The translations under genes and the position numbers were made by a program. 59,892 nucleotides of DNA from Macrostomum lignano (taxonomy: Eukaryota): contig NIVC01000443.1 of NCBI GenBank assembly GCA_002269645.1, positions 1 to 59,892 on the forward strand, in the 5' to 3' direction. Numbering within the stretch: position 1 is the first letter of the stretch; each line of letters begins with the position of its first letter. Below the pieces are notes generated by a model. That model searched no databases. It was not told where the DNA came from and saw only the letters and a program-made list of their open reading frames with translations. Below, piece by piece: positions 16,292-53,712 of the stretch.

Positions 16292-16370
16292 ATGTCGCTA
16301 CAGCAGCAATGGTTGCTGCTACAGCTTCTGTGCATCGTTGGATTGCAAGCAATAGCAATTGATACAGCAG
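16292..16370 (+). CDS. Exon 1, signal peptide [26 protein letters not shown]
   Basis: gccATG context, hydrophobic core, and a strong CAG|GTAAGT donor. Phase 1 matches the exon 2 acceptor at 19045/19046. It is too short for the ORF track. Confidence 0.8.
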
Positions 16371-52300: not shown

Positions 52301-53712
52301 GAGAATCCTGAATCAGGCTCAGCAACCGTGCTAGAGAATCCTGCAACAGACCCAGTAACCGTGCTAGAGAATCCTGAAGCACACCCAGCAACCGTGCTAG
52401 AGAATCCTGCAACAGACCCAACAGCCGTGCTAGAGAATCCTGCAACAGACCCAACAGCCGTGCTAGAGAATCCTGCAACAGACCCAACAGCCGTGCTAGA
52501 GAATCCTGCAACAGACCCAACAGCCGTGCTAGAGAATCCTGAATCAGACCCAACAACCGTGCTAGAGAATCCTGAAACAGACCCAGCAACCGTGCTAGAG
52601 AATCCTGCAACAGACCCAACAACCGTGCTAGAGAATCCTGCAACAGACCCAGCAACCGTGCTAGAGAATCCTGCAACAGACCCAACAACCGTGCTAGAGA
52701 ATCCTGCAACAGACCCAGCAACCGTGCTAGAGAATCCTGCAACAGACCCAGCAACCGTGCTAGAGAATCCTGCAACAGACCCAGCAACCGTGCTAGAGAA
52801 TCCTGCAACAGACCCAGCAACCGTGCTAGAGAATCCTGCAACAGACCCAACAGCCGTGCTAGAGAATCCTGAAACACACCCAGCAACCGTGCTAGAGAAT
52901 CCTGCAACAGACCCAGCAACCGTGCTAGAGAATCCTGAATCAGACCCAGCAACCGTGCTAGAGAATCCTGAATCAGACCCAACAACCGTGCTAGAGAATC
53001 CTGAATCAGACCCAGCAACCGTGCTAGAGAATCCTGCAACAGACCCAGCAACCGTGCTAGAGAATAATGCAACAGACCCAACAACAGTGCTAGAGAACCC
53101 TGCAACAGACCCAACAACAGTGCTAGAGAATAATGCAACAGACCCAACAACAGTGCTAGAGAACCCTGCAACAGACCCAGCAACCGTGCTAGAGAATCCT
53201 GCAACAGACCCAACAACCGTGCTAGAGAATCCTGCAACAGACCCAGCAACCGTGCTAGAGAATCCTGCAACAGACCCAGCAACCGTGCTAGAGAATCCTG
53301 CAACAGAACAAGCAACCGTGCTAGAGAATCCTGCAACAGACCCAGCAACCGTGCTAGAGAATAATGCAACAGACCCAACAGCCGTGCTAGAGAATCCTGC
53401 AACACTCACAACCGAACCCCCAAAATGCAGGTGCAATCGGTGTGCTTCAGCGCCGACTCCGAGATCCTGGCCTCGGGCAGCTGGGACGGCTCCATCCGGG
53501 TCTGGAAGCTGAACGACGGGTCCCAGCTGTGCTGGTTCACCTCCAACATCGACATCTTCAAGGTGATCCTGAGCCGGGACAAACGCTGCCTGGTGGGCCT
53601 GGGCGAGCGGGCAGGCAACCGGAAGCTGATCATGCTGCAGATTGTCCGGCAGAAGAGCAGCCGGACAAGGAGCCGCAACCCTTCAGCTGGCCAGACCATC
53701 GACGAGGTCTGA
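16292..53712 (+). CDS. Spliced gene (23 exons, ~3025 aa): neurexin-like single-pass receptor (SP, ~3 LamG-like, 6 LamG, ~8 EGF, TM) with cytoplasmic WD40 propeller
   Basis: Manual exons: 16292-16370, 19046-19741, 21899-23135, 23404-23548, 23628-24250, 25195-25605, 26144-26472, 27529-27788, 30777-30909, 31425-31575, 32346-32636, 32793-34369, 35919-35999, 37523-37750, 38572-39042, 40263-40768, 41350-41412, 42455-42609, 44382-44483, 46333-46764, 47368-47664, 48191-48718, 53431-53712. All introns are GT-AG and all phases match. Exons 1-16 sum to 7218 nt (2406 codons). Exon 18 is 155 nt and needs +1 nt to stay open. Confidence 0.75.
16559..17670. repeat. 31/33-bp minisatellite (GTGGATGGGAACTGA[GA]GACGGGAGTCAGCAGA) in intron 1
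   Basis: Two unit lengths differ by one GA. Confidence 0.95.
19046..19741 (+). CDS. Exon 2, atypical LamG/concanavalin-like domain
   Basis: Within ORF 18988-19797. Motifs [39 protein letters not shown]. Donor G|GTAAG at 19742. Confidence 0.8.
21159..21271. repeat. (CT)n microsatellite
   Basis: Direct reading. Confidence 0.95.
21899..23135 (+). CDS. Exon 3, two atypical LamG/concanavalin-like domains
   Basis: ORF 21865-23139. Motifs [63 protein letters not shown]. ctccccag acceptor and GTGAGT donor. Confidence 0.85.
23150..23280. repeat. ~25-bp repeat, ~5 copies, intron 3
   Basis: TCTCAATGATxxACAAAGACCCCAA units. Confidence 0.8.
23404..23548 (+). CDS. Exon 4, start of LamG-A
   Basis: [10 protein letters not shown]...[17 protein letters not shown] (LamG FxT motif). 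Phase 2 in, phase 0 out. Confidence 0.85.
23628..24250 (+). CDS. Exon 5, LamG-A end, Pro-rich linker, start of LamG-B
   Basis: [61 protein letters not shown] donor at 24251. Confidence 0.9.
24336..25130. repeat. 20-bp minisatellite (GAGTCCCAGATTGCATCCAT), intron 5
   Basis: Direct reading. Confidence 0.95.
25195..25605 (+). CDS. Exon 6, LamG-B
   Basis: [32 protein letters not shown]. Phases 2/2. Confidence 0.9.
25742..26082. repeat. 22-bp minisatellite (CCCTAATTATCAAACACCTGAA), intron 6
   Basis: Direct reading. Confidence 0.95.
26144..26472 (+). CDS. Exon 7, expanded neurexin-type EGF module
   Basis: VDVC...TC...[10 protein letters not shown]...FLGASC resembles the neurexin EGF tail (xCDCxxTGYxGxxC). 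Phases 2/1. Confidence 0.8.
26481..27381. repeat. 41-bp minisatellite, intron 7
   Basis: GAGATCCCATCCTGCGACCCTGATAGCCACTGCAGACACCT, period 41. Confidence 0.95.
27529..27788 (+). CDS. Exon 8, start of LamG-C
   Basis: DGNEQYLV...[20 protein letters not shown]|GTGAG donor. Confidence 0.9.
27820..28190. repeat. 15-bp minisatellite (CAGGGGCGCCAGCAC), intron 8
   Basis: Direct reading. Confidence 0.95.
28850..29828. repeat. 20-bp minisatellite (CTCTGGAACTCATCAACACC), intron 8
   Basis: Direct reading. Confidence 0.95.
30311..30625. repeat. ~16-bp decaying repeat (CAGAATTCCCCATCCT), intron 8
   Basis: Direct reading. Confidence 0.8.
30777..30909 (+). CDS. Exon 9, LamG-C middle
   Basis: [24 protein letters not shown] (the LamG DxxWH motif). 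Confidence 0.9.
31016..31273. repeat. (GAGT)n microsatellite, intron 9
   Basis: Direct reading. Confidence 0.95.
31425..31575 (+). CDS. Exon 10, LamG-C end
   Basis: Translates [23 protein letters not shown]...[16 protein letters not shown]. Polypyrimidine acceptor and CAG|GTAAG donor. Confidence 0.85.
31757..32366. repeat. 62-bp minisatellite, 10 copies, each containing the intron 10/exon 11 junction
   Basis: CAG|GTACCTCTACGACCTGTTCC recurs at ~62-bp spacing from 31786 to 32343. Confidence 0.95.
32346..32636 (+). CDS. Exon 11, Pro-rich linker and start of LamG-D
   Basis: [11 protein letters not shown]...[17 protein letters not shown]. Its acceptor is the last unit of the 62-bp array. Confidence 0.85.
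32678..32772. repeat. ~31-bp repeat, 3 copies, intron 11
   Basis: TTATTCAATTTGGCGCCACATGGACATACAC. Confidence 0.8.
32793..34369 (+). CDS. Exon 12, LamG-D, six EGF modules, start of LamG-E
   Basis: ORF 32671-34419. [19 protein letters not shown], CxNGGxC EGF motifs, [30 protein letters not shown]. Confidence 0.95.
34563..35619. repeat. ~26-31-bp minisatellite with a variable C-run (GGTGGTAGCTCTGC(C)nACATCCCC), intron 12
   Basis: Direct reading. Confidence 0.95.
35919..35999 (+). CDS. Exon 13, LamG-E end
   Basis: [27 protein letters not shown]. tttttcag acceptor, GTGAGT donor, phases 1/1. Confidence 0.8.
36328..37183. repeat. 20-bp minisatellite (TGAATGAAGTTTAAAGATTG), intron 13
   Basis: Direct reading. 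Confidence 0.95.
37523..37750 (+). CDS. Exon 14, EGF module
   Basis: NFRWNG...[34 protein letters not shown]. Confidence 0.9.
37795..38548. repeat. 12-bp-based degenerate repeat (CATGATCTCACT), intron 14
   Basis: Direct reading. It fills almost the whole intron. Confidence 0.9.
38572..39042 (+). CDS. Exon 15, LamG-F
   Basis: [40 protein letters not shown]. Confidence 0.9.
39073..40241. repeat. Compound microsatellite (TTAG)n then (TCAG)n, intron 15
   Basis: Switch at ~40030. Confidence 0.95.
40263..40768 (+). CDS. Exon 16, Gly/Ala-rich stalk, TM helix, juxtamembrane Cys cluster
   Basis: [26 protein letters not shown] (~40631-40702), followed by [14 protein letters not shown]|GTGAGT donor, phase 0. 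Confidence 0.9.
40855..41110. repeat. 16-bp repeat (CACAAACTTCCCCATC), intron 16
   Basis: Direct reading. Confidence 0.9.
41350..41412 (+). CDS. Exon 17, 63-nt symmetric cytoplasmic exon ([21 protein letters not shown])
   Basis: ctctgctctag acceptor, TCG|GTAAGT donor, open in phase 0. Confidence 0.55.
42455..42609 (+). CDS. Exon 18, Gly/Ala-rich cytoplasmic exon with an apparent 1-nt deletion
   Basis: tttcag acceptor. Reads [18 protein letters not shown]...ATLVAG and then hits TGA at 42590. The shifted frame continues [10 protein letters not shown] to an AGG|GTAGGC donor. Confidence 0.55.
42686..43153. repeat. (TCTA)n microsatellite, intron 18 (shorter copy at ~43530-43620)
   Basis: Direct reading. 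Confidence 0.95.
44085..44308. repeat. 62-63-bp repeat, ~3.5 copies, intron 18
   Basis: AAATTAG anchors at 44099, 44162, 44224, 44287. Confidence 0.85.
44382..44483 (+). CDS. Exon 19, 102-nt symmetric cytoplasmic exon
   Basis: ctttctcctcgcacctgcag acceptor, CAG|GTGAGG donor. Reads [34 protein letters not shown]. Confidence 0.7.
45152..45441. repeat. 33-bp minisatellite (CATGAGAGAGCAGTCATGCCCCAGTCATAGAGT), intron 19
   Basis: Direct reading. Confidence 0.95.
46333..46764 (+). CDS. Exon 20, low-complexity linker with polyQ, leading into WD40
   Basis: ORF 46228-46791. NAGNAG acceptor, AAG|GTGAG donor, ends NVFLSENIK. Confidence 0.8.
46783..47333. repeat. (TTAG)n microsatellite, intron 20
   Basis: Direct reading. 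Confidence 0.95.
47368..47664 (+). CDS. Exon 21, WD40 repeats
   Basis: [32 protein letters not shown]. Confidence 0.9.
47690..48140. repeat. 48-bp G-rich minisatellite, intron 21
   Basis: Period 47701->47749. Confidence 0.95.
48191..48718 (+). CDS. Exon 22, WD40 repeats
   Basis: [55 protein letters not shown]. Confidence 0.95.
48806..49752. repeat. 22-bp minisatellite (CAGAGTGACCCAATCTGAGTGG), intron 22
   Basis: Direct reading. Confidence 0.95.
50234..53403. repeat. 33-bp minisatellite (~95 units) with 43-bp edge units and 660-bp higher-order repeat, intron 22
   Basis: Unit GTGCTAGAGAATCCTGCAACAGACCCAGCAACC. Diagnostic variants recur at exactly 660 bp. Confidence 0.95.
53431..53712 (+). 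CDS. Exon 23 (last), WD40 repeats and C-terminus ...QTIDEV*
   Basis: [27 protein letters not shown] completes the GH..D repeat begun in exon 22. TGA at 53710-53712. Confidence 0.95.
   Translation: MQSVCFSADSEILASGSWDGSIRVWKLNDGSQLCWFTSNIDIFKVILSRDKRCLVGLGERAGNRKLIMLQIVRQKSSRTRSRNPSAGQTIDEV

What the first reader, a model, noticed from the sequence alone, without database searches (positions are those of the whole stretch)
16292..53712. Giant neurexin-like adhesion receptor apparently fused to an intracellular WD40 propeller
Seen: 23 same-strand GT-AG exons give SP / ~3 LamG-like / LamG-LamG-EGF-LamG-LamG-EGF x6-LamG-EGF-LamG / stalk / TM / ~330-aa linker / 7-8 WD40 blades. Established: alpha-neurexins and Caspr proteins have LamG-EGF ectodomains but only short cytoplasmic tails ending in PDZ-binding motifs, and WD40 propellers are normally soluble scaffolds. 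Inference: this receptor carries its own scaffold, coupling cell-cell or synaptic adhesion directly to a protein-assembly platform. Caveats: the join needs one added base in exon 18, and uncharacterised homologues may already be in invertebrate gene sets (not searched).
Basis: partly seen in the sequence, partly recalled or inferred. Interest (0 to 1): 0.9.

Follow-up and report, generated by a model that had tools for sequence, protein, structure and literature searches.

The report
Macrostomum orthologue of planarian PHRED-1 receptor
The window holds one real flatworm gene for a giant laminin-G/EGF membrane receptor with a WD40 propeller on its inner tail, but this design has been known since 2017 as the planarian muscle protein PHRED-1.

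Summary
On the + strand, from ATG 16292 to TGA 53710-53712, 25 GT-AG exons encode a 3041-aa protein. It has a signal peptide, about 7-9 LamG-type and about 8 EGF domains, one TM helix, a 281-aa linker and an 8-bladed WD40 propeller.

That gap is probably an assembly error. The window is a Macrostomum lignano Mlig_3_7 contig. Three near-identical copies carry CTTCG or CTCCG where the window has CT-CG. All 14 coding indels among the four copies are 1-bp homopolymer deletions.

The fusion is real:
- An RNA-seq-derived GenBank model of a sister copy (PAA81565.1) runs from LamG to the WD40 end.
- Intron-less transcript contigs from other flatworms span LamG-TM-WD40.
- Full-length homologues exist in trematode, cestode, mollusc and annelid.

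It is not new. Adler and Sanchez Alvarado (2017) described PHRED-1 of Schmidtea mediterranea with this architecture. It is restricted to Lophotrochozoa, expressed in muscle and needed for orderly muscle fibres during regeneration. This is an uncharacterised orthologue of a known family, so interest is low.

The parts
16292..16370 (+). Exon 1: start codon and signal peptide (aa 1-26, [26 protein letters not shown])
   Evidence: Sequence read; matches the N-terminus of the NCBI model P0044; hydrophobic peak at aa 5-27
19088..19741 (+).
21899..23135 (+). Exon 3: aa 245-656, holds Laminin_G_3 (aa 315-451) and a further unassigned region
   Evidence: Pfam PF13385 E 2.4e-17
23404..23548 (+). Exon 4: aa 657-705, start of LamG-1
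23628..24250 (+). Exon 5: aa 706-912, rest of LamG-1, Pro-rich spacer, start of LamG-2
   Evidence: Pfam Laminin_G_2, 2 stretches, E 1.6e-18 for aa 658-1159
25195..25605 (+). Exon 6: aa 913-1049, LamG-2
26144..26472 (+). Exon 7: aa 1050-1159, Cys-rich EGF-like spacer
   Evidence: Cys pattern in the sequence; no significant Pfam hit
27529..27788 (+). Exon 8: aa 1160-1246, start of LamG-3
30777..30909 (+). Exon 9: aa 1247-1290, LamG-3
31425..31575 (+). Exon 10: aa 1291-1340, end of LamG-3
32346..32636 (+). Exon 11: aa 1341-1437, Pro-rich spacer and start of LamG-4; its acceptor and first 19 nt are copied ten times in the upstream 62-bp tandem array
32793..34369 (+). Exon 12: aa 1438-1963, LamG-4, six tandem EGF repeats, start of LamG-5
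   Evidence: Pfam Laminin_G_2 E 5.7e-23; EGF, EGF_2 and EGF_TEN hits
35919..35999 (+). Exon 13: aa 1964-1990, LamG-5
37523..37750 (+). Exon 14: aa 1991-2066, end of LamG-5 and one EGF
38572..39042 (+). Exon 15: aa 2067-2223, LamG-6
   Evidence: Pfam Laminin_G_2 E 5e-10 and 1.6e-16
40263..40768 (+). Exon 16: aa 2224-2392, Gly-rich stalk, the single TM helix and the Cys-rich juxtamembrane motif
40631..40720 (+). TM helix plus the conserved signature [30 protein letters not shown] (aa 2347-2376)
   Evidence: Translation; hydropathy peak 2.63; S-x-L-[IL]-W-A-x3-C-K-P-G is conserved in flatworm, mollusc and annelid homologues
41350..41412 (+). Exon 17: aa 2393-2413, cytoplasmic linker (phase 0)
   Evidence: present in P0044, P0001, P0046 and P0047
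41532..41585 (+). Exon 18: aa 2414-2431, linker (phase 0)
42455..42609 (+). Exon 19: aa 2432-2483, linker.
42583..42592 (+). Frameshift site. The window reads GCT-CGCTG, and a base is missing after 42583 (TT or CC in the sister copies). As assembled, this leads to a premature TGA at 42590-42592, where NCBI model PAA82892.1 ends
43759..43794 (+). Exon 20: 36-nt micro-exon, aa 2484-2495, linker
   Evidence: in P0001, P0046, P0047 and P0050; canonical AG/GT
44382..44483 (+). Exon 21: aa 2496-2529, linker
46333..46764 (+). Exon 22: aa 2530-2673, linker with a poly-Q run; its last ~40 aa are conserved and lead into the propeller (N-terminal closing strand)
47368..47664 (+). Exon 23: aa 2674-2772, WD40 blades ([16 protein letters not shown]...)
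48191..48718 (+). Exon 24: aa 2773-2948, WD40 blades
53431..53712 (+). Exon 25: aa 2949-3041, last WD40 blades, C-terminus ...QTIDEV and TGA stop
   Evidence: Pfam WD40 E 8e-9

Best explanation
[quoted passage not shown] Positions 16292-53712 (+) hold a single 25-exon gene that is the Macrostomum orthologue of planarian PHRED-1.

The product is a type I membrane protein of 3041 aa:
- a signal peptide;
- a large extracellular part with one Laminin_G_3, six canonical LamG and about eight EGF domains, whose LamG domains are most like those of neurexin-1-alpha;
- a Gly-rich stalk and one TM helix, followed by a conserved Cys-rich W-A-x3-C-K-P-G-x-C motif;
- a poorly conserved 281-aa cytoplasmic linker;
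- a C-terminal 8-bladed WD40 propeller.

Shown: the gene structure, the domain order, the conservation of the TM-to-propeller unit across flatworms, molluscs and an annelid, and transcript-level continuity in sister copies and in other species.

Inferred:
- The 1-bp gap at 42583/42584 is a long-read homopolymer consensus error, not a real truncation.
- As in Schmidtea, the protein sits on muscle cells and binds matrix or neighbouring cells through its LamG/EGF part.
- The cytoplasmic propeller docks unknown intracellular partners, so that muscle fibres are laid down in order.
- The juxtamembrane cysteines may be palmitoylated.
For: Gene model
- 25 exons, all GT-AG, give one 9126-nt frame after a single inserted base.
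- Domains are confirmed, topology, and the propeller model and its 8-bladed PDB neighbours (Rsa4/NLE1, ODA16, TBLR1, Fbw7).

Identity of the window
- PAA82892.1 (BOX15_Mlig000372g4) sits on a contig of exactly 59,892 bp.

Continuity
- PAA81565.1 (2155 aa, sister copy L006) runs from LamG through EGF and TM to the end of the WD40 domain (...TIDEV). PAA68487.1 (707 aa) runs from TM to the WD40 end.
- These models come from StringTie/TACO RNA-seq assemblies that are cut at observed SL and poly(A) sites (PMC5730564).

Frameshift
- The sister copies read CTTCG (L004, L005) or CTCCG (L006) where the window has CT-CG.
- All 14 coding indels among the four copies are 1-bp deletions in short homopolymers. 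Thirteen of them lie in the other copies, and each explains where that copy's ORF model is cut.
- The assembly is Canu on PacBio reads, polished with Pilon. By REAPR, 64% of its bases are error-free.

Other species
- The intron-less contigs L001 and L003 carry LamG-TM-WD40 in one frame, whereas the same region in S. japonicum spans at least 10 exons over 25 kb.
- A profile search of 1.84 billion representatives finds full-profile, single-stretch hits. They are 2542 aa (Dicrocoelium), 3736 aa (Owenia), 1764 aa (Aplysia, named 'neurexin-1') and 2626 aa (Ylistrum). A 3038-aa Anoplocephala protein sits in a related cluster.
- They carry LamG plus a C-terminal WD40 domain. They are collinear with the window protein, with 36-44% identity in the propeller, and they share the TM/CKPG signature.

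Literature
- PHRED-1 has a signal peptide, 6 LamG, 9 EGF, a TM helix and intracellular WD40 repeats. It is 2536 aa, from an 8-kb transcript confirmed by 5'RACE, and runs above 270 kDa on a Western blot.
- It is expressed in muscle, and RNAi disorganises muscle fibres. Homologues are found only in Lophotrochozoa (10.1101/131789).
- An independent RNAi study reports a body-wall muscle fibre elongation phenotype (PMC6453901).
Against: - As assembled, the window's frame is broken at 42584 and the GenBank model on this contig stops at 42590-42592. No reads were examined, so a real frameshift in this copy is not excluded.
- No M. lignano read or cDNA was inspected directly. Transcript continuity rests on deposited models.
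- The Schmidtea PHRED-1 sequence itself was not available, so orthology is shown through shared homologues (Schistosoma, molluscs, annelid) and not by a direct reciprocal hit.
- Function in Macrostomum (muscle expression, phenotype) is extrapolated from a planarian, and nothing is known about what the propeller binds.
- The top of the representative search is crowded with multi-WD40 proteins, so absence outside Lophotrochozoa is not independently proven here.
Confidence: 0.88

Rival explanations
1. This particular genomic copy is a truly frameshifted allele or paralogue. The DV1 line carries extra chromosome copies, and this copy would make a 2489-aa receptor with its TM helix and a ~115-aa tail but no propeller, while the other copies make the full protein.
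For: - The window sequence as deposited lacks the base, and the deposited CDS PAA82892.1 ends at the resulting TGA.
- The genome has about 180 Mb of duplicated blocks, so a redundant copy could decay.
Against: - The missing base lies in a 2-nt homopolymer at a site where the sister copies differ (TT or CC). The other 13 coding indels between copies are of the same kind, which is the usual signature of long-read consensus error.
- The six exons downstream of the shift are 99.7-100% identical to the sister copies. They have no stops and intact splice sites.
Confidence: 0.09
2. There are two adjacent genes: an adhesion receptor ending near 42590, and an independent WD40 gene starting at the ATG at 46256 or at a spliced-leader acceptor. 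They would be joined only by read-through or by gene-model merging.
For: - M. lignano has many SL trans-spliced, polycistronic units.
- An in-frame ATG lies at 46256-46258 behind a good acceptor at 46224.
- Some public models hold only the WD40 part (P0048 with 377 aa, P0002, and the Echinococcus fragments).
Against: - The TM helix and the propeller lie in one ORF in transcript contigs of other flatworms, and in annotated proteins of trematode, cestode, mollusc and annelid. The TM/CKPG motif always sits 500-700 aa from the C-terminus.
- The TBONE pipeline, which cuts at SL and poly(A) sites, left g6 and g7 uncut.
- Ten consecutive phase-0 junctions keep the frame from TM to stop.
- In Schmidtea, 5'RACE and a Western band above 270 kDa, detected with an ectodomain antibody, fit the full-length protein.
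Confidence: 0.03
3. It is the flatworm's true alpha-neurexin, a presynaptic organiser that has merely gained a longer tail.
For: - The best solved-structure relatives of the ectodomain are neurexin-1-alpha chains (E 7.5e-29).
- The Aplysia family member is named 'neurexin-1' by NCBI.
Against: - The domain count and order differ from (LNS-EGF-LNS)x3.
- The tail is 670 aa with a propeller instead of ~55 aa with a PDZ ligand, and the C-terminal ...IDEV is not conserved.
- The planarian orthologue is expressed in muscle, not neurons.
Confidence: 0.02

Closest known systems
PHRED-1 (Pharynx regeneration defective-1) of Schmidtea mediterranea and its lophotrochozoan family (Adler and Sanchez Alvarado 2017, Dev Biol 427:165; bioRxiv 10.1101/131789)
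   Same: Both have a signal peptide, multiple LamG and EGF domains, a single TM helix and a C-terminal intracellular WD40 domain. Sizes are similar (2536 aa against 3041 aa), and both count six canonical LamG and about 8-9 EGF. The most conserved part is the C-terminal WD40 region. The family is found in flatworms, molluscs and annelids.
   Different: The Macrostomum protein has an extra ~650-aa N-terminal region (Laminin_G_3 plus unassigned beta-rich parts). Its linker is about 150 aa longer, with two micro-exons and a poly-Q run. SMART saw only 3 WD40 repeats in PHRED-1, whereas the model here closes into 8 blades.
Alpha-neurexin (e.g. neurexin-1-alpha, PDB 3R05/3QCW)
   Same: Both are type I membrane proteins whose ectodomains are built of LNS/LamG domains interspersed with EGF. 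The LamG domains give the best PDB sequence matches (E 7.5e-29).
   Different: Neurexin has exactly six LNS and three EGF in three LNS-EGF-LNS cassettes, and a ~55-aa tail ending in a PDZ-binding motif. This protein has a block of six EGF, extra N-terminal domains and a 670-aa tail with a propeller.
Crumbs and Caspr/CNTNAP
   Same: They are large LamG+EGF single-pass adhesion or polarity receptors.
   Different: Crumbs has ~30 EGF and a 37-aa tail with FERM- and PDZ-binding motifs. Caspr has discoidin and fibrinogen-like domains. None of these features was found here, and neither protein has a WD40 domain.
SCAP and other membrane proteins with cytosolic WD40 domains
   Same: A membrane-anchored protein presents a C-terminal WD40 propeller to the cytosol (a weak Pfam Beta-prop_SCAP hit, E 2e-9).
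   Different: SCAP is a polytopic ER protein with a sterol-sensing domain and no LamG/EGF ectodomain. The propeller similarity is generic.

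Membership tests
PHRED-1 family | N-terminal signal peptide | tested here: met
   [26 protein letters not shown]; hydrophobic peak at aa 5-27
PHRED-1 family | [quoted passage not shown] | tested here: met
   Pfam finds one Laminin_G_3, six Laminin_G_1/2, a block of six EGF and further EGFs
PHRED-1 family | Single transmembrane helix between the ectodomain and the WD40 part | tested here: met
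   One Kyte-Doolittle peak (2.63) at aa 2347-2371; the TM/CKPG signature is shared with homologues
PHRED-1 family | Intracellular C-terminal WD40 domain in the same polypeptide | tested here: met
   Met in the one-base-repaired frame of the window and in the intact sister-copy models PAA81565.1 and PAA68487.1. As deposited, the window's frame is interrupted at 42584.
PHRED-1 family | Strong sequence conservation of the C-terminal WD40 region with lophotrochozoan homologues | tested here: met
   36-44% identity, E 1e-66 to 1e-97, to Schistosoma, Dicrocoelium, Anoplocephala, Aplysia, Ylistrum and Owenia, collinear with the ectodomain matches
PHRED-1 family | Reciprocal best hit to S. mediterranea dd_Smed_v6_4789_0_1 | not testable with these tools
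Orthology is inferred through species the paper lists (Schistosoma, molluscs, annelids).
PHRED-1 family | Restricted to Lophotrochozoa | tested here: inconclusive
   All full-profile hits among the best 150 of 1.84 billion representatives are flatworm, mollusc or annelid. The list is crowded by generic multi-WD40 proteins, so absence elsewhere is not proven.
PHRED-1 family | Expression in muscle and a muscle-fibre disorganisation phenotype on knock-down | not testable with these tools
   Needs in situ hybridisation and RNAi in Macrostomum
Alpha-neurexin | Six LNS and three EGF arranged as three LNS-EGF-LNS cassettes | tested here: not met
   There are extra N-terminal domains, and six EGF sit in one block between LamG-4 and LamG-5
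Alpha-neurexin | Short cytoplasmic tail ending in a conserved PDZ-binding motif | tested here: not met
   The tail is 670 aa with a propeller, and the C-termini differ among homologues (...IDEV...IAET...PxxMA...QVLV)
Alpha-neurexin | LNS domains similar in sequence to neurexin | tested here: met
   The best PDB hits are neurexin-1-alpha 3R05/3QCW/3POY, E 7.5e-29 to 1.6e-24
Caspr/CNTNAP | N-terminal discoidin (F5/8 type C) and fibrinogen-like domains | tested here: not met
   No such Pfam hits at E<=0.01

The most novel reading that the evidence does not exclude
The one-base deletion at 42583/42584 is real in this copy. The karyotypically duplicated DV1 line would then carry, beside its intact phred-1 copies, a naturally truncated, membrane-anchored copy without a propeller. 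That copy could act as a decoy and would be a ready-made test of what the WD40 tail does.
Probability: 0.09. Interest if true: 0.3.

Novelty: new member of a known kind. Interest (0 to 1): 0.2.

Why it matters
The value lies mostly in annotation. Three GenBank 'hypothetical proteins' (BOX15_Mlig000372g4, g6 and g7) are fragments of one PHRED-1 orthologue. Each is cut at a different homopolymer indel of the assembly, and the work here gives the full 25-exon, 3041-aa model.

Macrostomorpha is an early-branching rhabditophoran lineage (my own background knowledge, not checked with a tool here). On that basis the gene places the LamG/EGF-TM-WD40 design at the base of the flatworms.

Three additions may help anyone who studies the family. 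The propeller is predicted to have eight blades, not three WD40 repeats. A juxtamembrane W-A-x3-C-K-P-G Cys motif is conserved from flatworms to molluscs and an annelid. Every intron from the TM exon onward is phase 0. M. lignano is transgenic-tractable, so it could be used to find what the propeller binds, which is still unknown.

Tried and rejected
- A word-indexed search with the raw concatenated ectodomain ORFs returned only two M. lignano models. It was useful for identifying the contig but gave no other species.
- A word-indexed profile search with the propeller alignment was swamped by bacterial multi-WD40 proteins and added only one fragment (P0209).
I re-ran it with database sequences only.
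- The Dev Biol version of the PHRED-1 paper (PMC5497596) is not held, so I used the bioRxiv text.
- No paper mentions Mlig000372, and none links Macrostomum with neurexin in a relevant way.
I rejected it in favour of 46333, because all four deposited transcript-derived or predicted models use 46333 together with the two micro-exons.
- I dropped the 42-nt exon 28601-28642 of model g4, because it is absent from g7 and from the ML2 models.
- Fold search gave only generic 8-bladed WD40 neighbours and no functional lead.
- I considered a conserved PDZ ligand at the C-terminus and rejected it.

Full report
**What is in the window**

The window is eukaryotic DNA with G+C-rich exons (66%) and A+T-richer introns (46%) full of tandem arrays. 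Stop-to-stop frames on the + strand between 16.3 and 53.7 kb hold LamG, EGF and WD40 matches in Pfam.

A search with the spliced WD40 half hit Macrostomum lignano proteins at 98% identity. A search with the ectodomain found PAA82892.1 (BOX15_Mlig000372g4). That protein lies on a contig of exactly 59,892 bp, so the window is that Mlig_3_7 contig.

**Gene model**

I mapped the deposited models onto the window and refined each junction. This gives 25 exons from ATG 16292 to TGA 53710-53712, with all 24 introns GT-AG. Its domain string is essentially right, and it counted 23 exons.

The 3041-aa product contains:
- a signal peptide (aa 1-26);
- a ~630-aa N-terminal part with one Laminin_G_3;
- six canonical LamG domains, a block of six EGF repeats and isolated EGFs;
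- a Gly-rich stalk and one TM helix (aa 2347-2371);
- a 281-aa linker without Pfam hits;
- 368 aa of WD40.

An AlphaFold model of the last 411 aa (pLDDT 82, pTM 0.79) has 31 strands, which I count as eight blades closed by an N-terminal strand. Its best PDB neighbours are the 8-bladed propellers Rsa4/NLE1, ODA16, TBLR1 and Fbw7. Every intron from the TM exon to the end is phase 0, while the ectodomain introns are mixed.

**The missing base**

The frame holds only if one base is added after 42583. The window reads GCT-CG-CTG and then meets TGA at 42590, where the GenBank CDS on this contig ends.

Three other loci of the same assembly are 97-99% identical to the window. At this site L004 and L005 read CTTCG and L006 reads CTCCG.

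I compared all coding exons between the four copies. Every indel is a 1-bp deletion in a short homopolymer. Thirteen lie in the other copies and one in the window. These indels explain why each deposited ORF is cut at a different point. Model g4 keeps the N-terminal 2489 aa, g7 keeps the C-terminal 2155 aa and g6 keeps the last 707 aa.

The assembly was made with Canu from PacBio reads and polished with Pilon in a highly duplicated genome. REAPR scores only 64% of its bases as error-free. I therefore read the gap as a consensus error, with about 0.9 probability. No reads were examined.

**Is it one gene?**

Neither holds.

- The GenBank annotation derives from StringTie/TACO RNA-seq assemblies. 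These were cut wherever spliced-leader or poly(A) signals were seen, and ORFs were called by TransDecoder (PMC5730564).
- Even so, g7 (PAA81565.1) runs from LamG through the EGF block, the TM helix and the linker to ...TIDEV, and g6 runs from TM to the end.
- A JGI contig (L001, 3448 bp) and a Logan contig (L003, 2536 bp) from other flatworms carry LamG end, TM, linker and WD40 in one intron-less frame.
- The same region of Schistosoma japonicum is spread over at least 10 exons and 25 kb, so these contigs are spliced mRNA.
- The S. japonicum model named 'sel-10' starts at a Met just before the TM helix. L003 shows that the frame continues upstream into a LamG domain.

**Family and distribution**

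I ran a profile of the TM-to-C-terminus region against 1.84 billion representatives. The only full-profile, one-to-three-stretch hits were long proteins with the match at their C-terminus. They are:
- Dicrocoelium (2542 aa);
- Owenia fusiformis (3736 aa);
- Aplysia 'neurexin-1' XP_012941838.1 (1764 aa);
- Ylistrum (2626 aa);
- a 3038-aa Anoplocephala protein in a related cluster.

The Owenia, Aplysia and Ylistrum proteins have 5-10 LamG domains plus a C-terminal WD40 domain. All five proteins are collinear with the window protein, with 36-44% identity in the propeller. They share the signature S-x-L-[IL]-W-A-x3-C-K-P-G at the cytoplasmic end of the TM helix, always 500-700 aa from the C-terminus.

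**Already described**

PHRED-1 of Schmidtea mediterranea is a 2536-aa protein with a signal peptide, 6 LamG, 9 EGF, a TM helix and intracellular WD40 repeats. Its 8-kb transcript was confirmed by 5'RACE, and an ectodomain antibody detects a band above 270 kDa. It is expressed in muscle and induced by wounds. RNAi thickens and disorders muscle fibres and disturbs pharynx and gut regeneration.

Fourteen homologues with LamG+EGF+WD40 were found, all lophotrochozoan. The C-terminal WD40 region is the most conserved part. A later study saw a body-wall fibre elongation phenotype (PMC6453901). Macrostomum is not mentioned in the paper, and no paper cites Mlig000372.

**Comparison with other families**

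The ectodomain's best solved relatives are neurexin-1-alpha chains (E 7.5e-29), so 'neurexin-like' is fair. It still fails the defining features of alpha-neurexin, namely three LNS-EGF-LNS cassettes and a short tail with a PDZ ligand. It also fails those of Caspr and Crumbs.

**How it most likely works**

Shown: a type I receptor whose conserved unit is the TM helix, the Cys motif and an 8-bladed propeller.

Inferred from the planarian work: it sits on muscle cells. Its LamG/EGF part binds matrix or neighbouring cells, and the propeller recruits cytoplasmic partners that control fibre calibre and order. The partners are unknown, and the cysteines next to the membrane may be palmitoylated.

**Verdict**

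The observation and the fusion are real, and the frameshift is most likely an assembly artefact. The gene is an uncharacterised orthologue of a published, functionally studied family. Novelty is 'new member of a known kind' and interest is low (0.2).

Noticed in passing
window 16551-17669, 24336-25129, 26485-27382, 28855-29832, 34564-35615, 36336-37184, 39074-40238, 42686-43154, 46783-47334, 47692-48145, 48806-49753, 50375-53404: Almost every intron of the gene carries its own unrelated tandem array with periods of 4 to 62 bp. The largest is a 33-bp unit repeated 92 times (3 kb) in the last intron. Several arrays are open in several frames and mimic long ORFs.
   Followed up: partly
window 31746-32365: A 62-bp tandem array repeats the acceptor site and the first 19 nt of exon 11 (cag|GTACCTCTACGACCTGTTC) ten times. 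Ten potential acceptors therefore precede the real one.
   Followed up: no
L004, L005 and L006 versus window exons 5, 10, 12, 15, 16, 19: All 14 coding indels between the four near-identical Mlig_3_7 copies are 1-bp homopolymer deletions. Each GenBank model of this gene (g4, g6, g7) is truncated at such a site.
   Followed up: yes
window 3037-4175 (- strand): Two adjoining ORFs match the Major Facilitator Superfamily (MFS_1, E 1e-9 and 6e-4). They are probably exons of a transporter gene upstream of the receptor gene.
   Followed up: no
window ~59080-59892 (- strand); L006 46350-50046; L005 19575-23419: In the sister loci a 914-aa CCDC39-family gene lies tail-to-tail downstream. The window aligns to the start of that interval at 89% identity, so it probably holds the 3' end of the same gene.
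   Followed up: partly
P0002 (368 aa, UniParc UPI0007A1367A): This is a complete propeller that is 79% identical to the window's. Its identifier is close to those of M. lignano entries, so it may be a second, diverged Macrostomum paralogue of the gene.
   Followed up: no
window 28601-28642: GenBank model g4 includes a 42-nt exon ([14 protein letters not shown]) that is absent from g7 and from the ML2-based models. It is either an alternative exon or a spurious one.
   Followed up: partly
L002 (S. japonicum CM038288.1) 433-510 and 10001-35197: The S. japonicum protein annotated as 'F-box/WD repeat-containing protein sel-10' is a 5'-truncated PHRED-1-family model. A LamG-like match lies about 9.5 kb upstream of its annotated start.
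   Followed up: partly
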